From NCBI RefSeq assembly GCF_963853765.1, contig NC_088862.1, forward strand, positions 19,964,001-20,028,000: 64,000 bases of DNA. The letters run 5' to 3'. The notes below the pieces were generated by a model. It was not told the origin of the DNA. It did no database searches and was given only the letters and a program-made list of their open reading frames with translations. The DNA comes from Magallana gigas. Its lineage: Eukaryota. The position numbers were made by a program, and so were the translations under genes. Of the stretch, positions 35,401 to 48,679 are shown piece by piece (the first letter of the stretch is position 1; every line of letters begins with the position of its first letter).

Positions 35401-38400
35401 ATACAAGTAAACTAACGATAATTGTTAGGATGGTAACGCAGCACATGGCAATAGAAATATACATTTCATAAAGTATTAAAATTGCTATTAATTTTCAGAG
35501 AGAAAGTAGCGAAGAAAGTAAATAAATAGAATATACAAATTTGAGGGTGTTGCACTTCCTATGCTAAGTTTCCCTAAGGGAGTTGCAGATAAAATGGAAG
35601 AATTCGATATTAATATTTTTTGCATGCATTGTTGTGTATAAAGCAGTGTAGAATTTCATTTGAAAAGTTTGTACTAACTTATTGAAGACCATGAAATGAA
35701 TTTGAAAATGGTTACACTGACAAACGTGGCAGATTTCACGCTTTATTAAAGGGGAATCCTCATCACTGTGAAAAACTGCCTCCTTGAAACAAAATCAATT
35801 TAATCTTAATGTTTAGAGTATAACAATTTCTTGAAAACTGCCATTTCTGATTTTTGTTTCAAAGAGGCATTTTAATAAATCTGACTTTTGGAAAAAAAAT
35901 CATATATACATTTGAAATCTAAAAAAGATGTGTTAAATTTCCCCTCTTTACATGTAATTCATGTCTAGATTAGTCGAGTGGTAACGCAGTTAGAATAGAT
36001 CATAACAATGTCTTACATTTTTGACTGGGTCAAATCCCGAAAAAGATGGATTTTTAAAATTATAGTTCTTTTAATCGCATGGACAAGTAATGTATATAGA
36101 TACTTTAAGAACGTCAGAATAAAGTTATTTAAATTCCTGTTAATGAAATATTTTGCATGTCTTCTCATTTTCTTCTGAACAAGAGATTTGAAAACAATGT
36201 ATTCATAATGCATTAATGTAGAAAGTTGATTTTTCACCCTTTTTTTTAAATGACCGGGTATACTGATTTCAAAAATACATGTACAGGTTGTTAAAAGCGA
36301 ACAAAAACATTTTTAAAAGTTTGAATCGAGGATGAAGCAATATGTTACTGAAAATATGTACTGATTACTAGTAATTTGTTCTACCTTTTTATCTAGGAGA
36401 TTTAGCGTTTATTTAGATATTATAGAAACATGGGATGGTTACAATTACAACTCTGACGGTTTTGAAGAGCCAGAATCAGATTTATTCATATATTTCAAGA
36501 ATGATTTTTTTAAAACACGTTGGACAGTAGAAATCAAATTGATATATTTTAACATTAAAATACAGAATATATGGTTATATTTCTAAATGTATTTCGTGGT
36601 TGCCATGTTCGATAGAAATGTGCGTAAAATATTTGTTTACTATTATTTTGCCTTCATACGGAACACACCCGCTATGTAAATTTAGTCGTCCACGTAATGT
36701 GTCTATATTTAAATATGGCTCCTAAATGATACGGATATCTTGAGGTCCTTTCCACGTTAGGGAATAGACCCGCTTTTATGCAACACCTTCTTTACAACAT
36801 CAACACTAGACATCCACTTGAATCCGGTTTTGGCCTGTTGCCCCTTGGAACCCACTTTCTTAGCACTGTGCTAGTTTATTATCGCTAAGTGTGAGTTAGC
36901 AATATAAACAACTACATGTATGGGAATACCTATGCAATGTGGCAATTATATATTTTACAAAAATATTATTTGGTCCACGTTATCTAGTTCCACTGAGTGA
37001 GATAAGTCACCAAACGGTTGACCATATATCTCAACCATTTCATTGGCACAATGGTAGTACATGTATCGGTAAGCGCTTCTAATGTACCAGCTAACATGAG
37101 TTAGTTATGACCTTTCCATACCCATAAAGGAAGTGTTACAGACACCAACCATTCATCACTACTATACCCCAAATTCAGCATGGGAATGTTGTAAATGAGC
37201 CATATGTTGTAGGTAATAATTAAAATATATAACTCTAGCACTCTTGGAGATTCTTGTATATGTTAAGTGTTAAGAAGTTAGTAGCAATGTATGTCGATAC
37301 TAAATATTAAATAAGTAAAAGTCAAGTTGTAAAATGACTTTCGCCCTTCAACATCGGTTAAAAGTTGTGCATATTTTCTGCAAATAAACATAATTTAAAA
37401 TCTTAAAGAAAAAATAGAAATGAATACTCATCCTTTTCTTTTTTACTAAATTTAGCTTGCATACAATGTTTGAATTTTATGCATAAAAACAAACATGTTT
37501 CAAGATCCTGTTATGTGGTTGTATGTTTGAGTTTCAGCTAAACACACTTATCTTATTTACATGTAAGATATGCGTTAGGTTTGGCATCGAACAGGAACAT
37601 CAGGTCTCTGTTTGAACTCTTTTGAACGGAGATTAGTTTAACTCTGTTTTCTTGTTCTTATTTGTCTAATTCAAAGCAATAGTAATATAATACATATAGT
37701 TTTACATCTTAAAGCAAAATTGATTTTATAATTACCAATTCACAGCTCTACAATATGCAACAAATAAATTCTATCGGGTGATTTCATCAATGCCCATCAT
37801 TCAAGTAATGAGGCGCAAAAATATCAATAGACAGACATAAGCACCTCTCTTAGACAAGTTTGAACTCAATTACAAGAACGCGGAAGTTCCCAATTTCTGA
37901 ACTAATGATTTATATTGTCTGCAAATTAAAAAGAACTGATCACTTAAATATACATCTGACGTAATCAATGTTCTATCGCACTACATTGACAACAGAACGC
38001 TATAATTAACACCATCATTTATATATTTTGAACCTAGATGCAATTTATGAAATCTTAGAATTGAATTCAATCACAATCTGAAGATATATATTATGTGCAC
38101 TAATGAATACTTAAAATAAGTTTATCATTCTACATTCAATATTCTTCGGCAATTATTGGCAATTTTCATATGGTTCGTTTTTGTCTCTAGTCAAACGCAG
38201 AGACATAAACATATTTTCAATAACACTGCGTGATGTATTATTATCAGAGTTATTAACAAATGTCCTTACAATTTTCAGCACAAATCTGATAGGGCTATCT
38301 ATCAGTGTCATCTTACAAATCCCCCGCCGCATAACATTTCAAAGGCTGGGCCGAGGTATGATAGATATCTGTCATCTGATTATTCCATGGTTATTAAAAC

Positions 38401-39235: not shown

Positions 39236-40740
39236 TGAACGAAGAACTACATAAAACTCCGATTCTCGTTTTTGTGTTAAGATATCTTATGAGAAAAGAG
39301 CATAGTGTAGTGAACTTGGAGGTAATCGTCGTATTGATTATAGTGATCTCCTGGTTTTCACTGAAGCATAACGTAGTAATAGATTGTATATATCGCCACA
39401 GTATTTAATTTAAAGTAAATAGTCCTGAATAAGAAATTGAAATTACAAAGTTTCTTCATTTAAAAAAAATCTTTGACTAAAGTCATCTTCTTGCATTATC
39501 CCTCTATCATAAGTTATGTTAGTTATATCTGAAAACGTATACGTATACATCCGTATCGCTTAGGAGCCATATTTAAATATAGACACATTACGTGGACGAC
39601 ATAATTCTGTTTGAATTTGACTCGAATTATTAGATAAACCAAAAATTCAAGGAATATAATTGTGCAGTGCAGTGCAGAAGATGAAATTATTTGAATTTTT
39701 GGGTAATAAGTCACAGTCAAACTTTAATCCTCTACTTAAAAATTAATTTTCCTTTGTTAGATTACATATTTTTGTGTAATCTGTAGTAATTTATATTCAA
39801 GTGGTTCACGACACTGCATCTCCATACACACATGGCAAATACTTTACAAAATATACAGTTTGTATTAGTTAACAAAAGAAAAAAGTTCAAAAAGTTCTTT
39901 AAATCAGGGTTAGTGTTAAAATACATTTATTTAGATTCCATTTTGATTCAGAATACAAGTAATGAAGTATTTATAAATGGTATAATGTACTTGGCATCAT
40001 GATCTATATATACTAGTATTCGGATCAAAAACATCACCCCCGGTAATCCTGTAAGCCATACTGACCTCAATTGCTTTCCAACATGGCAAGGGAAAAGAAT
40101 ACTTATTCAATAAATAATGTAATTCGCAGTAACAAACGTCAAATCAGCTATCATAATGTGTTTAATATGAAAGGAACGGCAAGATTTGGTGAAGAGTACG
40201 TCATTAGATTGAGGTCTCCGCTGGAGCAGGCCTCCAAACACCGGCTATAGCAGTACTCTGTCAGGCTTAGACCTTATCTACGGAGGCACTGAAATGAATA
40301 ATTGTGTTTCAGCAAACGGTTAGTGTTTTTATAAATCTTTGACCTTTTCCTAGAAATTGAATAAGAACATATATTGATATTATCTCCGTCTATTTTACGT
40401 CATTCAGTTTCACCAATACTCGCATGTTTAACTCAAATCCATACAAAACTATTGATATAATAATTCTTTTATTTCCCCATTTTTTAATATAAAAGATGTT
40501 AAAAATTATTTTATTTCTCAAAAAAGTTACGATAACGTTTCATTTTCAATGGTAAGGTATTCTGTAATATTGAAATGAAATAGTGATACTCATGGAAAGA
40601 AATGAAGTTTTGTTATTAGTATAAAATCTTTTGGCTTTTATATTAATATGAAATCTTTATCTCTATAGCAAACTGTAAAAAAATGTTGATTAACCTCATA
40701 TTTATTCTTTGTTACCTGTTTGTGTTTCCCCACGTCATTA

Positions 40741-41100
40741 TATAAATAGTGTCTGTTTGGGAGGGTAACAGTTGAAATTGACACCCCGAGAAAACCATTG
40801 TCAACCGACGCGAAGGGTGGTTGACAATGGTTTTCGAGGGGTGTCAATTTCAACTGTTATCCTCTCAAACAGGCACTATTTATTTTGTTATACTGAATGT
40901 CTTAATTTTTAAGAAAATTTTACTGCTTTTATATAGGAATAACGTGAATTCTACAGCAAACCGTACGCGCATAACTTTCGCGCATGTAACAATTTTTAAT
41001 GTTACCCGTTGCTAAGTGCGTTGCTAACGCTGAGGGTAATAGAACGGATTGTGAACTGCGTCTTAAACAATCAGATTTCAGTTTAACATGAAAGTATAAC
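40741..41100 (+). mobile_element. Long-palindrome non-autonomous element (Crypton-like by architecture)
   Basis: 64-bp arms at 40743-40806 and 40819-40882 around the loop gacgcgaagggt. The tail to ...acatgaaagtataa is shared with 45499-45818. Confidence 0.75.
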
Positions 41101-41990
41101 AATTTCATATACAAAACTAAATAACAAATATAACCTGAACAATTTGCGTAAATTGTATTAAATAAATACTTATTTTCAAATCATGGTAAGTCCAAAAGCC
41201 ATTACACTATACTATCATATGTGATCAAATTTTTAATCTATTGCACAAATTGCACAACACTGAAAAATTTAATTGGATCGGTACTAATGTAAATAAACCC
41301 CAAACATTTAGACATAAAATGATGTGTCACTGCAACATATAAGGTTTTATATGCAGCTTTGTGTTGTAATCAAGGAACGAGAGGGAGAACCAAATACACT
41401 CACTATCCGGTCGTCAGTTCAGAGGTAGCAGCCTTTGATGCGTAATCTCTGTGGAGATTAGCGTTTGGAGATTTTCAATATGAGATTGCAATACCTCTGC
41501 AGTGCCTCAGAAAAAAAAGATTGATGGAAAAGCGTGGAAACTAATCAATATGTCGACTTATAATGACCACTCTGGCATTTGAATAAAGCTTTTTTTCATT
41601 TCTCTTCTCTTTGTTTTATCGCTGTTCAGGCTAAGAGACATAGAATAAAAAAAATCTATACGCAAAAGCATTAATTTGGAAGGAAGGGAGGTTTTGTGCT
41701 AGAAGAGCTTTGTCAGAGTAATAAGGATAAATTTTTATTTTGTGACATCATTCAATAACACATTGTCAATGAATTAGACAAATGTTTATTAATAACATTG
41801 AATATCTCATTTATATCATTATGAACCAATGTTAAGGTTTCACCTAAACAACATAAAGTGAGAGTCTTGATATGTCAGCTATGACTTTTAATTATAGATT
41901 GTGTGTATTATACGTTTTCGTGAAGTGCAAGCCATAAGTCTAGTTACATTAGTTTTTTAATATTCGCTTTGTTCTTTAATTCAAACTAGT

Positions 41991-42044
41991 GTATAACCGG
42001 CGTTATCGGTATAACCGGTATTATCGGTATAACCGGTATTATCG
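41991..42044. repeat. 18-bp minisatellite, 3 units (gtataaccggtattatcg)
   Basis: Units at 41991, 42009 and 42027. Confidence 0.92.
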
Positions 42045-43257
42045 GCATGCCAATGCAAGGATAACAATATAACCCATGAATGATGCTAGGGAACCCATGA
42101 CATTGTATTACGAATGTAATTGGGTTGTAAAATGGTGCAAAAGGAATCATGTATTAACATATTTACACCTACAATCAGTATGGAGGTACCCATTAATAGC
42201 CTTCTTGCAAAAAAACAAACCCCCCCAAAACAACCCCAACATGCTGGTATTTTTAAATTAGACACACGTTTCAAATAAAACTATCAAACTTTACATTAAC
42301 TTACAAAACACTTTAGCAAATAAAATACATTATTGAAATTGCTGTATGTCTTTTAAATTTTTACACATCCAAAAATATGGGCTTTGCTTACGTTGGGCTT
42401 AAATATTTGGCTGTCATAAAAATTCCTTCCATCACTTGCAGTAAAAAAACAGAAATGTTTGAGACATTTTAGCTTTCTGTATGTGGGGGAGATGTACAGC
42501 TAGATAAGTTAATGCGTAAGAATCCAGTAAATATCAATTAAGAGAGAGCCACAGAAGTAGCAAAATATCCAAGTCTTTCACAAAGGACCGGCCAGGAGAA
42601 CTGTCACACTGACGGAGGCTAGAGATGGTCAACAAATTAACCATCAGATCTGCCTAGAATTTTAAGATATGATTTGTTCAGCTATTAACTATTGTTTGTT
42701 AGGAAAAATTCCATATATTGTACCATTTGAATTGGGTATTTTTCAATATTGTTCAATAAAGCTCTTCTTCTCAAGGAGATCAATACAGTCTGAAATATGG
42801 TTACAACTACCGAACCCTCTTGAAATCAATTTGGTATATTTTCTATCTACGACATTCCATTCACTGTATCGACGGGAAGTACATCTATGTATTTTAATCT
42901 TTTTTATGAATAAAAAATTAAATCTTATATTTTGTCTCGTTTCATCTAGATCTAATCTGTATACGATTGGTTTATACTCAAAAGAAATTTGAATCAAACT
43001 GTTGGGGGGGGGGGGGGGGGGGGGGGTTGATAATTGATTGCTGCAATGTCTTCCGTATACTGAAGAGAAACTATTGCCATTTTCATGTTAAAAAATTTAA
43101 ATGCTTTTTTAAAAGCAAAGGCTCGTTTTTAAACTTAAAACATATTTGATGTTTCATTCCGGAATGATTTCAGATTGATATGAAGCAGAAAATCAAAGTA
43201 ATCTGTAGTATCATTCATATAATGAATTATAATATGATTTCCATAATCTATACTCAC

Positions 43258-43443: not shown

Positions 43444-43647
43444 CTGCAAAATATCACTGCAGCTGTTTTCTTTTCACTACAAACAGGAAGTATGATCTTA
43501 GTTTTCAGACCTTTATAAATTTTACTCTCGTGGGTCGCCATGGGTTCAGATGACCGGTATTGACTTAAAACATAATTCATCTTAAGTTTATGACTAACTA
43601 GAACAATGAATGATGCAATTCTTCCATCAGATCTAACTAAAGATTTT

Positions 43648-44556
43648 TGTAACTCCAAGGGGGTCACTGCCTGTGTTCCCCCGCGGGCCCGTACCCGAGA
43701 TAGAATCGGATAGCCCTGATTGCTGTCAATATTTACAAGTGCAGACTTTAATCACCGCTCCAGCACATATATAGGGCCTCGACGTTACGCAGGCAGGAAT
43801 GACCGCACACCTACGCAACTCAACAGGTACCAACGTTAACGCAAGCAGGGATGACCGCACCCTTGTGTCAACAGCTCAACCTAACGCAAGCACTTGCGCT
43901 AGAAATGCCAACATCAGCAGGGATGACCACACACTAGTGCTCCGCCGCAACCACCACCAAAACAAGCAGGGATGACCGCACACTTGTATCAATGCGATAC
44001 AGAGCGGGGATGACCGCTCACTCTGTATCGTACGTTAGATCACCCAAAGATTAGATATACGAGATGACCACACTCTTAATCTAGACTTACCTGTCTAACT
44101 TTAACCCCAAACTTTCGCTCCAATTATTGATAGAGATACTATATTTATATATGTGCCTGCTTAAAATAATTTGAAGTATCTAAAAATTAGAAATCAAAAA
44201 TAAACACACTAATCCAATCTATTCCAAAACTACTTATGCACAACACCTTATTTACATATACTATTTATTATTGTATAAAAATAATCATCACAATAATTGG
44301 TTAACAGAGGATGCATTAATTAAATAATCAAGAATCAATAAATCAAGGGCAATAACTCAATACAAAAATACAGTAATAAGCTGCCCGCTTCATTTTTATA
44401 TCTTTATCTTGGAAATAAACTATTATTTATAAAATCCTAGTATTTCAGATATCAGAATTCTATATTCTACATCTATGTAATTGTATATCTTTATCTTGTC
44501 AAAGAAATAAAAAAAACGGTCACGGCCATCCATCCCTCCCTCTGAATGATGTTACT
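43648..44556 (-). mobile_element. LTR-like segment (possible solo LTR)
   Basis: On the minus strand it begins AGTAAC and ends GTTACA (5/6 inverted termini). Order is repeat array, then TATATA (43767-43772), then ATTAAA (43747-43752), then the end. No TSD found. Confidence 0.4.
43784..44082 (-). other. Array of six stem-loops with a conserved core GTGTGCGGTCATCCCTGC (minus strand) and unit-specific closing stems, plus one coreless hairpin
   Basis: Cores at 43793, 43845, 43917, 43966, 44004 and a degenerate one at about 44058. Flanks of each unit are mutually complementary. Confidence 0.85.
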
Positions 44557-45498
44557 CGTGCTGTAGTGGATATTTCTTTCATATACATGTATACTAAAAA
44601 CTCATTGCAAAAGATAAAGTATCAAAATTCTGAACCTGAAATCTGCTTTTTATATCCGAAGATAGCCTCTTAACCTGATTTTTAGGCATCGTATTACTGA
44701 TGAAGACTAATCTTTAGCTTGTTATAAAACAATCATTCCACTACCAAATGCTAGCTTCTCAGGAGTTAATTCTTTGAAATAAAATTGTTAAACGTAGTTA
44801 AGTTTGTAGCAACATAGCTGGTATCGCAGAATTTTCACTTTTCAATATGGCATACCGTCTGCTTCTCCACATATTGTGTTATAAATGAAAACTAATGTCA
44901 AAGAAAAAATAGGAAAAGTTTTTATTGGTTGGGGGTTCCGCTTGATTAGCTATCTTTTTTACTTTGGTTTACCAGACGAGAGACTTTAGACGTCACCAAT
45001 CCAGTTCTTTAATTTCTAACCTTATTGACAAATATATTGAATTGTCTCCAAGGATCTTTGTTCAATACCTTGTCTCATCATTTGGCAAAATTTTACAGAG
45101 AAAATAGATATAATTGAATAACAGAGGAAGTCGGCTGTCTCGCATGTTGTCCTCTGCTCGCGGGGGTCCACAGAAGGTCAGAGGCTCTTCCTCTCAGTAA
45201 AAAAGCGCTATGTTGTTTTGGAAAGCGGATTGCAAGCAAAGTAGCATAGCAGATGGTGTATTTTGCATGCCAATACCTTTTCCAATGTTTTGTATAACAA
45301 AACATTTGTATTGTATATTTTTTGAATGGTATTTAATAGATCTCGATTTGTTTAGAATATTTTTTAGCAATGTATGTACCTTGGGTTTGGTTTGGGGAAA
45401 TTTTTTACGAATGATTTTATTTGTTTTATCTTGTAGTTTATCACACTTGGTTACTTTCAAATGCCTATTGAGAGAAGATACATTGAAAGGGTTTTATT

Positions 45499-45818
45499 AT
45501 ATAAATAGTGCTTGTTTGGGAGGGTAACAGTTGAAATTGGCACCCCGAGAAAACCTGGTGAATTTTCTCGGAGTGTCAATTTAAACTGTTACCCTCCCAA
45601 ACAGGCACTATTTATTTTATTATACTGAGTGTCTAAATTTTTGAGAAATTATCACTGCTTTTATATACAAATGTAGAAATAACGAGAATAAATTACGCGC
45701 ATGTAATAGTTCGTTGTGTTACCCGTTTCCAAGTTTGTTGCTTACGTTGAGGATATTAGAAGGTATTATCAATTGCGTATAAACCAATCAGATGTCAGTT
45801 ATCAACATGAAAGTATAA
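45499..45818 (+). mobile_element. Second, more diverged copy of the long-palindrome element with a shortened hairpin tip
   Basis: Arms at 45502-45553 and 45563-45614. Same downstream tail as 40883-41100. Confidence 0.75.
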
Positions 45819-48679
45819 TAAAAATGACTGTTCATTTATAAGAAATAATTGTGTCCTTGTCATTGTATAGGTTCATTGAAATTCATTGCTTTAATGTATT
45901 TTCAAAATAATTAACAAACAGAGATAATTATGGCGATAGTACTAAACTAGAGATGTTAAATGATCCTAAAGGGTACCAATGGAGCAAGAGGATGCTACAT
46001 GTACATTTCTTAAAATCAGTGTTTTTAATTATTATTGATACGTTTTGAAAAACGAAAGTTCAAATCACCAAGCCGCTATTTTGATATTTTATCGATAAAG
46101 TTGTTATCTGTTGAACATATGATATAGGACACTGTGAATGATGATTGTAAAATAGACCACCGTCTAAAGAACCCTTATTGTATAAACACACCTCGTGAAA
46201 ACTACCCAGAACTGCTTCGCATATTACCCAGTGTGATATTGGATAAAAGAAAACCAAAGAAACCCTTTGAACACAACAAAATGATAAATGTCACGATGCA
46301 ATTTAATTGAAAAACTATTTTGAAAAATGAAAGATTTTAAGAAACAAATTGAAATTATATAATTAAAAAATTTAAAAAAAAATATAAAACACAATGCAAC
46401 TGATCATAAACTGGTACAATACAAATAAAAACGTTATGTAATAGAAATTGAAATTATACAACGCTGACTGAACACTAAAAGTTTGATGTAGTGAGCTAAT
46501 TTCTTGTGAACAAGGAGATCGGTTTGTATTTTTAAAACTTAAAGGACATCATGCGCTTATGAGATTGCAGTTTAGGATTACTTTATTTTAAATTTCATTT
46601 TACTTTAAATTTGTAATTCCACTTTCCTTTTTAGCGGCTGTATAATTAAAGAAATTTGACTTTTTGTTAAAAATTGTGAAGTCCGTGAAATAAAACCAAG
46701 AAAAAAAGATTTTTACACAAATTTTACACAATACAATACACTTTGTTCGGAATCATAATGGTTAGCAAACATTGACAAAAGAACTTTCCACTTAAATGTC
46801 ATTTTACTATTTCCCTTCGGAATATGTAAGTATAAGAGTAATCTAATGGATAGCTTTCATTGAAATGTTCCCAAGACGATAGAAGACAAAGTCAACTGGC
46901 AATACCAAAACAGATTTTTACGTAAAACTAAACCAAGCTTAATAATAGACTATCATTATCAAATTTATTGTTAATGTGTCTGCATTGTTCAATCAACCCC
47001 AGACCCCCAACCCCATTCCAACGGGTTTTACATCTGGTGATAAATACATATAGGTCATGACTATAAATAGGGAACACACAATAGCACATTTATTCTTCAC
47101 CGAATTAAACAGAATATAAAAAATTGTTTGGAAGAATCTTAAACTGCAAGACCACTTGACATATGTATTTATTATATTACTTTTGCGATATTCTTAACAT
47201 CCCATGATTTTGACCGATTTTTAAAATTTACGTCAGCATACAGAGAAACTCGCCTGATAATATTCAATTTACATAATAAGTATTTTTTTTCCTTCAAAGC
47301 AAACGAACTTATGAAGGCCAAACGATCACAAATATTGATAGAGGAGCAATATCTAATGTCGGGAAACTAATCTTTATTACGCATAAAGTCACATATTGCA
47401 ACTCGTAAGCTTTTACGTTGCAGACGTCTCATCCATTTAGTGTATCATGTGATTCCCCGATCCCGAAGTAAATCAGGATAAATGAGGTAACATCTGCCGC
47501 TTAAATGGTTCAAGTGGCGTAGAAATTTTTCGTGTAATGTTGTCTTCCAACGACTGAGGCATCTGTCAATGCAACAAAATAGCTATTGGTGTCTGAACAT
47601 GTCCGCTGTAAAGGAAAGAAACATTGTAACATATTGTTTTCGTGGTGAACACGACACCACTCCTTTCCCTATTGTGTCACTTAAATGAATGTGGTTGTGG
47701 AGTCGAGTGACATATTTCAGTAATGGGTTAGGCAACCATTTTTTATATCAAAAGTAGTTAATTTTTGGAATTTCCAGAAGTAGGTTGACAAATATCCCGT
47801 TTTTACAGATAGAAGATCAAGATTATGTGAAAAAGAATGAATTACCATACATCAATATTACCTTAAAATGGTGAACATTTTAGAAACAAAAACAATTTAA
47901 GTGTCGTTTTTTTAATTAATTAAAAGAAGCTGTAACATATAAGCAACATTTTTAGAATAATTAGATATAGTAACGTGAAGTGGTGTTGATAATAAAATAC
48001 ATGGTATTGTCATTTCTTTGATACATATAGTCCATACCAACAACAATAACTACATGTATGTGATATTAAATACGCTGCTGTAATTTTAGTACTTTGCTCC
48101 ACAGTGTTGCTTTTATTATTGCCGTTGTTTTCTTATTTTTTCATAGTTCTCAAATGATTTACAGCTTTTTGAAGATTTTTTTTCGTTCTGGTTCAAATGG
48201 TAACTTTTTCTGTAACATGTGAACATGCAAAAACCAGTGTAATTCCTCCAGAAAATGTGTAGACTCAACTTATTTAGCTCTTTTTTTTTTAATCGTATCT
48301 TCATGTGAGCAAGACTATTTCTATTAAAATAGGTATTTTGCCAGATCCTCACACAAGATATATCTGCTATTATAACGAATGTTTTAAATGGATATTTTGT
48401 AGAATAATTATTCTATTTTAATAAATCCTATAATATTGCTTTAAGAATTTTAAGATGTTTTGTTTTGTTAATTGGTTGCGAGAGTTACTTTGACTGTTGT
48501 GTATTTTGTATTGTGATCAGCTAGTATGTTTATTATTCCACTGGGTTTTTTGTTGTTGTTCATATGGGTTTTTTGTTGTGTTTTTTTACGTTTTTTTTTC
48601 ATAAAAGTTTACATTTAAGGATGATAGGAAACCTCAAACAAGCCTTTTTAACCTAATCATCGTATTTAACCTTGTTATT

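What the first reader, a model, noticed from the sequence alone, without database searches (positions are those of the whole stretch)
43784..44082. Strand-specific array of UCAU-capped hairpins: conserved core, different but self-complementary stem on each unit
Seen in sequence: an 18-nt core (plus gcagggatgaccgcacac; minus GUGUGCGGUCAUCCCUGC) recurs six times at irregular spacing (43793, 43845, 43917, 43966, 44004, ~44058). It looks superficially like repeat-spacer DNA, but the spacers are not free sequence. Each core is closed by its own stem: minus-strand GUUGCGUAGG/CCUGCGUAAC (10 bp, 2 G-U), GUUGACACAAG/CUUGCGUUAAC (11 bp, 1 G-U, 1 mismatch), AGCACUAG/CUGAUGUU, CAUUGAUACAAG/CUUGUUUUGGUG (12 bp, 3 G-U, 1 U-U), CGAUACAGAG/CUCUGUAUCG (perfect 10 bp), AGAUUA/UAAUCU. 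Most plus-strand A-C mismatches become G-U wobbles on the minus strand. The core itself folds on the minus strand as G-C, U-G, G-U, bulge, G-C, bulge, GG/CC with a UCAU tetraloop. Several core substitutions keep that fold: G-C becomes G-U in unit 1, G-U becomes G-C in unit 5, and units 3 and 5 change only bulged bases. Established: YCAY in hairpin loops, in clusters, is the Nova/Pasilla KH-domain ligand, and bulged hairpins with small loops are classic capsid or packaging operators (MS2 type). Inference: a selected multivalent RNA (or ssDNA) protein-binding array, for example a retroelement packaging, localisation or host-factor module. I know of no description of it.
Basis: partly seen in the sequence, partly recalled or inferred. 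Interest (0 to 1): 0.85.

Follow-up and report, generated by a model that had tools for sequence, protein, structure and literature searches.

The report
Seven-hairpin module of oyster retrotransposon LTR
The repeated hairpins are real, but they are an internal part of a 745-base solo LTR left by an oyster LTR retrotransposon. In the parent element the module looks like a selected, folded RNA platform, whereas this copy is decaying neutrally.

Summary
Five near-exact copies and one degenerate copy of an 18-nt core lie at the stated coordinates. Each is flanked by its own complementary arms. A seventh unit (43881-43902) has lost its core.

The array is not a free-standing locus. It sits inside a 745-bp dispersed repeat (window 43648-44392, sense = minus strand). 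That repeat has TG...CA ends and TTTT on both flanks. In copy L210 an exact 18-nt complement of the tRNA-Leu 3' end (a primer-binding site) follows it. So it is an LTR, and the window copy is a solo LTR.

Related copies occur in oyster-derived contigs and in three Magallana gigas gene models. The copies decay evenly across cores, arms and linkers (about 10-12% mismatch each), so single copies are not under selection.

The seven units of the family do show strong compensatory covariation:
- 11 of 18 pairs carry double changes, 0/500 shuffles.
- RNAalifold predicts the same fold.
- The best copy folds with z = -6.7.
- Non-Watson-Crick positions are biased towards G-U on the sense strand (11:2).
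- A 16-19-bp inverted repeat closes the domain.

Best reading: a reiterated RNA stem-loop platform in the retroelement's genomic RNA. The link to Nova/KH proteins is unsupported. This is a new variant of a known kind, of moderate interest.

The parts
43648..44392 (-). Solo LTR (745 bp) of an LTR retrotransposon family. Sense strand reads 5'-TGAAGCGGGCAGC ... CCCTTG(G/C)A(G/C)(T)TACA-3'.
   Evidence: The left end is shared by independent loci with unrelated flanks: L203/L204, L205, L200/L201 and L207/L208, plus L209/L210, where PBS and internal sequence follow it. The right end is defined by L210, which is 84.6% identical over window 44392..43644. In L210 the 3' end is followed after 7 nt by TGGTGGCAGCGGTGGGAT, the exact complement of the 18-nt tRNA-Leu(AAG/TAG) 3' end. 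There is no second copy and no internal sequence in the window.
43644..43647 (.). Left copy of the candidate 4-bp target-site duplication, TTTT.
   Evidence: Read directly from the sequence. It is low-complexity, so it is weak evidence on its own.
44393..44396 (.). Right copy of the candidate 4-bp target-site duplication, TTTT.
   Evidence: Read directly from the sequence.
43784..43819 (-). Hairpin unit U1. On the sense strand the arms are GUUGCGUAGG/CCUGCGUAAC, with 2 G-U pairs. The core has 1 mismatch.
   Evidence: z = -3.4. CM R1 scores it 39.4 bits.
43835..43872 (-). Hairpin unit U2.
   Evidence: z = -1.5. CM R1 scores it 41.1 bits.
43881..43902 (-). Unit U2b. The arms are intact and 14 nt of the core are deleted in this copy.
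   Evidence: I5, D4. Other copies carry a core here. CM R1 scores it 25.7 bits. Fold z = -4.4.
43910..43941 (-). Hairpin unit U3. The stem is weak in this copy.
   Evidence: In one search it does not fold as proposed (z = +0.7). CM R1 scores it 34.2 bits.
43955..43994 (-). Hairpin unit U4, with an exact core. The stem has decayed from a perfect 9-bp stem seen in other copies.
   Evidence: CM R1 scores it 46.6 bits.
43995..44030 (-). Hairpin unit U5, with a perfect 10-bp stem.
   Evidence: I3. One search gives z = -6.4. CM R1 scores it 30.2 bits.
44048..44082 (-). Hairpin unit U6. The core is degenerate in this copy and intact in L203.
   Evidence: CM R1 scores it only 11.2 bits, E ~1.
43763..43778 (.). 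Left arm of the inverted repeat that brackets the array (GCACATATATAGGGCC on the + strand). It is TATA-like. On the sense strand it reads ...CCCUAUAUAUGUGC.
   Evidence: The 19-nt inverted repeat is 95% complementary in L210 and 89% in L202. It forms the closing helix in the folds.
44135..44156 (.). Right arm of the bracketing inverted repeat. It is degenerate in the window because of an insertion.
   Evidence: Alignment with L202 and L203.
43747..43752 (-). ATTAAA on the sense strand, 10 nt downstream of the left inverted-repeat arm. It is a candidate polyadenylation signal.
   Evidence: Read from the sequence. It is conserved in L210 at 782-787. A role as a signal is inferred.
43648..43762 (-). 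GC-rich 3' part of the LTR, a candidate R/U5 region. It contains a GGGGG...CCCCC hairpin and ends in ...TTACA.
   Evidence: Alignments. Calling it R/U5 is inference from canonical LTR layout (PMC3601003).
44157..44392 (-). AT-rich 5' part of the LTR (U3).
   Evidence: Homology with L202 and L210. Composition is shown.
44085..44093 (-). CAG|GUAAGU, the only strong 5' splice-site consensus in the window. The perfect match is specific to this copy.
   Evidence: Other copies have CAGGTACGG.

Best explanation
The array is the central module of the LTR of an oyster LTR retrotransposon that uses tRNA-Leu as primer. The window holds a solo LTR at 43648-44392, with its sense strand on the window minus strand.

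In the ancestral element the module had seven stem-loops of about 42 nt. Each has 8-12 bp of unit-specific stem. Each is topped by the same apical piece: G-C, U-G, G-U, bulged U, G-C, bulged C, G-C, G-C and a UCAU tetraloop. G/U-rich linkers separate the stem-loops, and a 16-19-bp long-range helix closes the whole domain of about 400 nt.

Shown:
- The element is an LTR.
- The units covary.
- The fold is better on the sense strand.
- Individual genomic copies, including this one, decay neutrally.

Inferred:
- The hairpins form in the element's genomic RNA. Most likely this is in U3, that is the 3' UTR, because the sense-oriented TATA-like box and ATTAAA lie just downstream of the array, about 125 nt from the LTR's 3' end.
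- They act as a reiterated binding platform for one protein. That protein could be the element's own Gag (selective packaging) or a host factor for export or stability of the unspliced RNA.

At this locus the array is a relic with no demonstrated function.
For: LTR identity:
- Independent loci with unrelated flanks (L203/L204, L205, L200/L201, L207/L208) share one end, which L209/L210 also share.
- L210 gives the other end.
- The termini are TG...CA. Their first 12 bases match as an inverted repeat at 8 of 12 positions (my own alignment of the ends read, not a tool result).
- TTTT flanks both sides in the window.
- In L210, 7 nt after the LTR, lies an exact 18-nt complement of ATCCCACCGCTGCCACCA. 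PMC10591036 identifies this as the 3' fragment of tRNA-Leu AAG/TAG, and the same 18-mer appears among snail small RNAs in PMC7328434.
- L209 and L210 share the sequence downstream of the LTR at 78% identity over the alignment that spans both.

Family: homologous arrays are found in three M. gigas protein models and in 11 fetched contigs.

Neutral decay of copies:
- Mismatch to the family majority is 9.8% (left part), 10.4% (arms), 11.7% (cores) and 10.5% (linkers).
- Pairing of a copy's own arms is 82.6%, against 81.9% for arms taken from different copies.

Structure:
- The seven units of L210 pair in 89.7% of cells against 71.5% in shuffles. 11 pairs and 24 cells have double changes, reached by 0/500 shuffles. 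Slid controls give 40-52%.
- RNAalifold independently returns the same fold, with 11 compensated pairs.
- The L210 domain folds at -180.8 kcal/mol with z = -6.7 and all seven hairpins plus the closing helix. The antisense strand gives z = -4.2 and recovers fewer of the unit hairpins.
- L202 gives z = -3.1 on the sense strand and -1.8 on the antisense strand.
- Majority-state arms hold 55 Watson-Crick pairs, 11 sense G-U, 2 antisense-type and 2 other. Neutral substitutions in copies split 32:22:36.
- A covariance model built from L210 recovers six window units, all on the minus strand, and nothing else in 64 kb.
Against: - No RNA data were available, so transcription, the U3/R/U5 borders and the folding molecule are not observed.
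- A second TATA-like box upstream of the array could place the array in the 5' leader instead.
- Pfam did not recognise the ORF pieces after the primer-binding site as gag. No contig holds both LTRs.
- The TSD is low-complexity.
- The + strand of the array is A+C-rich even in the linkers. Part of the G-U bias could therefore reflect a strand-biased mutation process in the retroelement cycle rather than selection.
- The seven units are not independent: U2/U2b and U4/U5 are recent duplicates.
- Short-read contigs through repeats may be chimeric.
- U3 regions commonly carry DNA enhancer repeats, so a DNA-level role is not excluded.
Confidence: 0.6

Rival explanations
1. DNA-level enhancer. The seven 18-bp cores are binding sites for a transcription factor in the U3 region of the LTR, like the tandem enhancer repeats of other LTRs. 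The hairpin potential is incidental or serves cruciform formation.
For: - The array lies upstream of a sense-oriented TATA-like box and ATTAAA, about 125 nt from the LTR's 3' end. That is where U3 enhancers sit.
- The layout is a conserved 18-bp core with variable flanks and irregular spacing.
- The core contains a GGTCA/TGACC word.
Against: - A double-stranded binding site does not explain why arms that differ between units stay complementary within each unit (11 compensated pairs, 0/500 shuffles).
- It does not explain why non-Watson-Crick positions are almost all G-U on one strand (11:2).
- It does not explain the 19-nt inverted repeat that closes the domain.
Confidence: 0.17
2. Single-stranded DNA role. 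The hairpins form in plus-strand DNA, which has the same sense as the RNA, during reverse transcription. There they might pause synthesis or guide strand transfer. They do not act in RNA.
For: The sense-strand bias of wobble pairs fits G-T in plus-strand DNA as well as G-U in RNA. LTR sequences pass through single-stranded DNA stages.
Against: I know of no precedent for a seven-fold hairpin array with an invariant apical motif acting in plus-strand DNA. G-T pairs and tandem wobbles are less stable in DNA. Nothing here separates this reading from the RNA reading.
Confidence: 0.07
3. No function. A palindromic unit of about 50 bp was tandemly duplicated in the LTR by replication or reverse-transcriptase slippage or snap-back. 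The pattern is a by-product of that history.
For: - U2/U2b and U4/U5 are evident recent duplicates.
- LTR U3 regions often hold variable tandem repeats.
- All present copies decay neutrally.
Against: Under neutrality the cores should have diverged among units as much as the arms did. In the family's majority state the cores differ at 0-3 of 18 positions. The arms differ at up to half their positions and do so in a compensated way. In the well-preserved copy L210, arm columns 5-12 hold 1 non-wobble mismatch among 56 cells.
Confidence: 0.1
4. Host regulatory RNA at this locus. This is the first reader's reading taken literally: a selected array, for example Nova/KH-bound YCAY hairpins next to a 5' splice site, acting in a host transcript.
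For: A perfect CAG|GUAAGU lies 3-10 nt upstream of U6 on the same strand. It is the only such site in 128 kb of both strands. Each unit has a UCAU loop.
Against: - The copy diverges about 5% from the family majority in all compartments alike.
- One core is deleted and one is degenerate.
- The splice-site match is copy-specific. Other copies read CAGGTACGG.
- No open reading frame or Pfam match lies upstream.
- YCAY density is not above shuffles (p = 0.06).
Confidence: 0.03
5. The repeat is not an LTR but a SINE, a LINE 3' tail or a MITE that carries the array.
For: One end is constant and the BLAST end points on the other side vary. There is a weak 12-bp terminal inverted repeat. No second LTR or recognisable gag/pol was seen.
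Against: - The apparent 5' truncations dissolve on inspection, because homology continues beyond the BLAST end points.
- The exact 18-nt tRNA-Leu complement next to the 3' end in L210 is what a 5' LTR predicts.
- There is no tRNA-like head, and T-runs lie near the sense 5' end.
- No matching inverted terminus occurs in the window.
Confidence: 0.03

Closest known systems
Multi-stem-loop response elements of complex retroviruses (HIV-1 RRE; HTLV-1/BLV Rex-responsive element in U3/R)
   Same: A domain of several hundred nucleotides in retroelement RNA, closed by a long helix. Several hairpins radiate from it and serve as a multivalent protein platform. The HTLV element also lies in the LTR. This rests on my own knowledge.
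   Different: There is no sequence similarity and no Rfam hit. Here one hairpin is repeated seven times with an identical apical motif, rather than several different stems. No Rev/Rex-like gene is known for this element. Binding is untested.
Constitutive transport elements of simple retroelements (MPMV CTE, IAP RTE, MusD MTE)
   Same: Cis-acting structured RNA in the 3' untranslated part of an unspliced retroelement RNA. The CTE repeats one conserved internal-loop motif within variable helices and recruits a host export factor. This rests on my own knowledge.
   Different: The CTE has two motif copies in one extended hairpin. Here seven separate hairpins each carry a bulged helix and a UCAU tetraloop. 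The motif sequences are unrelated. An export function is untested.
Array of five iron-responsive elements in the transferrin receptor 3' UTR
   Same: Several hairpins at irregular spacing. They share a conserved loop and bulge and have different, covarying stems. Together they form a multivalent site for one protein. This rests on my own knowledge.
   Different: That is a host mRNA rather than a mobile element. The loop is CAGUGN with a C bulge. There is no enclosing long-range helix.
Tandem enhancer repeats in LTR U3 regions (e.g. MLV 75-bp repeats, Tnt1 BII boxes) and the gypsy Su(Hw) site array
   Same: A reiterated short conserved motif inside a retroelement's regulatory region. Copy number varies between copies. 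The general LTR layout is described in PMC3601003.
   Different: Those act as double-stranded DNA sites and have no unit-specific complementary flanks. Here the arms covary and show strand-biased wobble pairs.
   Same: A small hairpin with bulged bases and a 4-nt loop. A YCAY tetranucleotide is exposed in the loop.
   Different: The MS2 operator has a bulged A and an ANYA loop. Here, on the supported strand, the bulges are U and C and the loop is UCAU. Nova sites are dense single-stranded YCAY clusters. Here there is one per ~50 nt, not above shuffles.

Membership tests
LTR of an LTR retrotransposon | Terminal TG...CA with short inverted repeats | tested here: met
   The sense strand reads 5'-TGAAGCGGGCAG... 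and ends ...CGTTACA-3' in L210 and, with small changes, in the window. My own alignment of the two ends matches them at 8 of the first 12 positions as inverted repeats. The 3' end resembles the YNYAACA consensus of PMC3601003.
LTR of an LTR retrotransposon | Primer-binding site complementary to a tRNA 3' end just downstream of the 5' LTR | tested here: met
   L210 895-912 reads TGGTGGCAGCGGTGGGAT, the exact reverse complement of ATCCCACCGCTGCCACCA (tRNA-Leu AAG/TAG 3' end, PMC10591036). It lies 7 nt after the LTR end. L209 carries a degenerate version.
LTR of an LTR retrotransposon | Target-site duplication of 4-6 bp | tested here: inconclusive
   The window has TTTT at 43644-47 and 44393-96. 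This fits but is low-complexity. No other copy was seen with both flanks of a solo LTR.
LTR of an LTR retrotransposon | Two direct copies flanking an internal gag-pol region | tested here: inconclusive
   L209 and L210 share the sequence after the primer-binding site, within an alignment that is 78% identical overall, and it carries broken ORFs. Pfam found no gag. The contigs are too short to reach a second LTR.
LTR of an LTR retrotransposon | Dispersed multi-copy family with unrelated flanks and neutral decay | tested here: met
Structured cis-acting RNA element (generic) | Compensatory covariation supporting the helices | tested here: met
   Among the seven paralogous units. There is none among genomic copies, as expected for dead copies.
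Structured cis-acting RNA element (generic) | Transcribed on the folding strand | not testable with these tools
   No RNA data were available. The sense orientation follows from the primer-binding site only.
Nova/KH YCAY cluster | Dense cluster of single-stranded YCAY | tested here: not met
   There are 6 YCAY in 299 nt of the sense strand, all of them the core UCAU. Shuffles average 3.0 (p = 0.06). The antisense strand also has 6. Protein binding is not testable here.
MS2-type coat-protein operator | Bulged A two pairs below an ANYA tetraloop | tested here: not met
   The consensus fold on the supported strand has U and C bulges and a UCAU loop. An A bulge with an AUGA loop exists only on the strand that folds worse.
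Any Rfam family (including miRNA, snoRNA, ribozymes, retroviral elements) | Score at or above the gathering threshold | tested here: not met
   There were 0 hits at gathering threshold in 64 kb. The best local hits had E of 0.27 or more and scored far below the thresholds.
Coding repeat | Core read in one frame, with spacing in multiples of 3 | tested here: not met
   Spacings are 52, 72, 49, 38 and 54. The core is read in all three frames within the one open frame.

The most novel reading that the evidence does not exclude
The seven-fold stem-loop domain is a previously undescribed type of retroelement cis-element. One invariant apical motif (tandem U-G/G-U, two bulges, UCAU tetraloop) is repeated on covarying stems, and a long-range helix in the LTR closes the domain. 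It would recruit many copies of a single protein (Gag or a host export or stability factor) to the genomic RNA of a mollusc LTR retrotransposon. That would make it a natural, MS2-array-like multivalent tag.
Probability: 0.35. Interest if true: 0.6.

Novelty: new variant of a known kind. Interest (0 to 1): 0.42.

Why it matters
If the module is a protein-binding RNA platform, it gives a compact and clearly defined motif for asking how invertebrate LTR retrotransposons select, export or stabilise their genomic RNA. The motif is a 42-nt unit with covariation support and is absent from Rfam. Almost nothing is known about this outside vertebrates, yeast and Drosophila.

There are also practical consequences for oyster genome annotation. 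At least three Magallana gigas protein models translate the antisense strand of this array. The family also breaks short-read assemblies.

For the window itself, the result is that the locus is an ordinary solo LTR.

Tried and rejected
- Rfam at gathering and at permissive thresholds found nothing.
- Exact and gapped pattern scans of viral contigs and metagenome contigs gave only chance matches. Two false leads turned up: L053, a phage iteron-like array, and L169, a bacterial 21.5-nt tandem repeat. They share only the word GGATGACCGC.
- Exact look-up of ten window ORFs found none in the collection.
- Pfam searches on ORFs around the array and on the pieces after the primer-binding site found nothing.
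- Literature searches for the core and for linker strings found only unrelated primers. The oyster satellitome and bivalve TRIM papers do not contain the motif.

Ideas considered and dropped:
- Hammerhead or other ribozymes, C/D snoRNA, SECIS and miRNA cluster. There are no Rfam hits and the hairpins are only ~42 nt.
- A coding repeat. The core is read in all three frames.
- A DNA transposon with terminal inverted repeats. The window holds no matching terminus.
- A SINE or LINE 3' tail with 5' truncations. The apparent truncations were BLAST end points inside diverged sequence.
- TSD candidates AAAGATTTTT at 46705 and CAGATTTT at 46911. The L210 boundary superseded them.
- An intron start at the CAGGTAAGT. 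The match is copy-specific.

I did not build a family consensus or an ancestral sequence. Majority states were used only for per-position counts.
Full report
**1. The observation**

The 18-nt core GCAGGGATGACCGCACAC is on the + strand at 43793, 43845, 43917, 43966 and 44004 with 0-2 mismatches. The chance expectation is 0.02, and 0/100 shuffles reach five. A degenerate sixth copy lies near 44058. Nothing similar exists elsewhere in the window.

Complementary arms flank each core. Eleven pairs are changed on both sides, reached by 0/500 shuffles, and slid controls give 43-53%.

It is a hairpin that shares its stem with unit 2 and has no core.

Several details were overstated:
- The stems are diverged versions of one palindrome and not unrelated sequences.
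- Unit 3 does not fold as proposed, and units 2, 4 and 6 are marginal.
- On the window copy alone the two strands cannot be told apart. The whole array gives z = -1.42 and -1.20, and the excess over shuffles is equal on both strands.

**2. What the array belongs to**

Rfam gave nothing. Pattern scans of viral and metagenome contigs gave only chance matches.

The breakthrough came from a spurious 58-codon ORF that runs through the array on the + strand. It has homologues:
- three Magallana gigas UniProt models, K1QQG1, K1PPY4 and K1PPM5;
- several short contigs from sequencing runs and oyster-associated metagenomes.

A second search used antisense-frame ORFs and brought more contigs.

Independent loci with unrelated flanks (L203/L204, L205, L200/L201 and L207/L208) share exactly the same end, at window ~43648. 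L209 and L210 share that end too. Contig L210 is 84.6% identical to window 44392..43644 and defines the other end. The array therefore lies inside a 745-bp dispersed repeat at window 43648-44392.

**3. The repeat is an LTR and its sense strand is the window minus strand**

- Read on the minus strand, the repeat starts with TG and ends with CA. The two ends are weakly inverted-repeated, and TTTT flanks it on both sides in the window.
- In L210 its 3' end is followed after 7 nt by TGGTGGCAGCGGTGGGAT. This is the exact reverse complement of ATCCCACCGCTGCCACCA.
- That 18-nt sequence is the 3' end of tRNA-Leu AAG/TAG (PMC10591036). The same 18-mer is found among small RNAs of the snail Biomphalaria (PMC7328434).
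- This is a canonical 18-nt primer-binding site.
- L209 carries a degenerate version at the same place. L209 and L210 continue with homologous sequence holding broken ORFs; the alignment spanning LTR and downstream sequence is 78% identical. Pfam did not recognise these ORFs as gag.

The window has no primer-binding site, no internal sequence and no second copy. It therefore holds a solo LTR.

I first considered a SINE or LINE tail because the BLAST end points looked like 5' truncations. Inspection showed that homology continues beyond them.

**4. Individual copies are not under selection**

Across six copies, mismatch to the per-column majority is 9.8% in the left part, 10.4% in the arms, 11.7% in the cores and 10.5% in the linkers. 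The window copy is about 5% diverged everywhere.

Across ten copies, arms pair as well with the partner arm of another copy (81.9%) as with their own (82.6%). There is one compensated double change against five uncompensated ones. Single changes at Watson-Crick pairs give sense G-U, antisense-type A-C and other mismatches in the ratio 32:22:36, as expected for neutral decay.

In the window, the core of unit 2b is deleted and that of unit 6 is mutated. Other copies keep both. The perfect 5' splice-site consensus next to unit 6 is the only one in the window. It is also copy-specific, because other copies read CAGGTACGG.

**5. The master element was under selection for hairpins on the sense strand**

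- In the best-preserved copy, L210, seven units of 42 nt align without gaps. 89.7% of cells pair against 71.5% in shuffles. Eleven pairs and 24 cells carry double changes, reached by 0/500 shuffles, and slid controls give 40-52%.
- The same structure on the antisense strand pairs 69.8% of cells.
- RNAalifold, with no structure supplied, predicts the same fold. This includes the inner helix G-C, U-G, G-U, bulge, G-C, bulge, G-C, G-C with a UCAU loop.
- In majority states, the ten arm positions of the seven units hold 55 Watson-Crick pairs, 11 G-U pairs on the sense strand, 2 of the antisense type and 2 others. This is far from the neutral 32:22:36 ratio. The two invariant wobble pairs of the core add to the bias.
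- The cores of the seven units differ at 0-3 of 18 positions in majority state. The arms differ at up to half their positions.
- A 19-nt inverted repeat, 95% complementary in L210 and 89% in L202, brackets the array.
- The 430-nt L210 domain folds at -180.8 kcal/mol with z = -6.7. All seven hairpins and the closing helix appear in both the MFE and the centroid. The antisense strand gives z = -4.2 and recovers fewer of the unit hairpins. L202 gives -3.1 against -1.8.
- A covariance model built from L210 alone finds six window units, all on the minus strand, at 25.7-46.6 bits. Nothing else in 64 kb scores below E = 0.1. In the other loci every hit is on the sense strand.

The strand indicated by the wobble pairs and the strand indicated by the primer-binding site agree, and the two lines of evidence are independent.

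**6. Mechanism**

Shown: the array sits in an LTR, it has a covarying seven-hairpin domain, it folds preferentially on the sense strand, and genomic copies decay neutrally.

Inferred: the domain folds in the genomic RNA.

The bracketing inverted repeat is TATA-like in both copies. The copy downstream of the array reads TATATATG on the sense strand. An ATTAAA follows it 10 nt later, and it lies about 125 nt from the LTR's 3' end. This fits the canonical TATA, poly(A) signal, short R, U5 layout (PMC3601003). On that layout the whole domain lies in U3, which is the 3' UTR of the genomic RNA. If the upstream TATA-like box is the one used, the array would instead be in the 5' leader, and the closing helix could form only at the 3' end.

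One invariant apical motif repeated seven times on variable stems is what a multivalent site for a single protein looks like. Element-encoded Gag (packaging) and a host export or stability factor (as for CTE, RTE or MTE elements) are the two candidates I consider most likely. I cannot choose between them.

The main rival is a DNA enhancer role in U3, which could also coexist with the RNA role. It does not explain the compensated arms, the strand-biased wobbles or the closing helix.

**7. Comparison with known systems and novelty**

In function, the nearest analogues are:
- retroviral multi-stem response elements (RRE, and the Rex-responsive element in U3/R);
- constitutive transport elements;
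- outside mobile elements, the five iron-responsive elements of the transferrin-receptor 3' UTR.

The array is a member of none of these, because sequence and motif differ and Rfam is silent. The Nova/YCAY link is not supported: there are 6 YCAY in 299 nt (p = 0.06). The MS2 operator features are not met on the supported strand.

I found no description of this element. I rate it a new variant of a known kind, namely a cis-acting structured module of a retroelement. The window locus itself is an ordinary solo LTR.

**8. Limits**

- No RNA data, complete oyster genomes or repeat libraries were available.
- The family sample is ten short contigs. Some may be assembly chimeras: L203 and L204 have 99.9% identical flanks but arrays only 75-82% identical.
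- The seven units are paralogues with shared history, so the shuffle statistics overstate independence.
- The TSD is low-complexity.
- I did not build a consensus or ancestral sequence of the element.

Noticed in passing
window 40737-41102 and 45496-45821: A direct repeat pair, 74% identical over 368 bp. The two copies also match each other in inverted orientation over about 140 bp. They look like two old copies of a foldback or MITE-like repeat flanking the region.
   Followed up: no
window 36679-36736 and 39549-39606: A 58-bp inverted repeat, 93% identical and 2.9 kb apart. These are candidate terminal inverted repeats of a DNA transposon.
   Followed up: no
window 43004-43026 and 42003-42045: A run of 23 G, and a palindromic 18-mer TTATCGGTATAACCGGTA repeated 2.4 times.
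   Followed up: no
window 44085-44093 (minus strand): The only MAGGTRAGT 5' splice-site consensus on either strand of the window lies directly next to hairpin U6. Other copies of the LTR read CAGGTACGG, so the perfect match arose in this copy.
   Followed up: partly
Magallana gigas proteins K1QQG1, K1PPY4, K1PPM5 (P0001, P0002, P0007): Three UniProt gene models translate the antisense strand of this LTR array. One is fused to the C-terminus of a Tpt1/KptA homologue. Another uses the array as the first exon of a membrane-protein model. These are probably annotation artefacts, or exonised LTRs.
   Followed up: partly
L203 1196-2369 versus L204: Two Logan contigs have 99.9% identical flanks, but their arrays are only 75-82% identical. 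Either the assemblies are chimeric through the repeat or the locus is hypervariable.
   Followed up: partly
L053 5500-5900 (IMG/VR contig) and L169 750-1400 (metagenome contig): Unrelated prokaryotic arrays that share only the word GGATGACCGC. L053 is a phage iteron-like cluster of (A/C)GGATGACCGC. L169 is a 21.5-nt tandem repeat, CCATACCCAGGGATGACCGCAC.
   Followed up: partly
L209 1041-2104 versus L210 398-1497: The two copies that carry primer-binding site and internal sequence are 84% identical in the LTR array. A stretch of the internal region is only 71% identical. The conservation is uneven, and I did not determine the cause.
   Followed up: no
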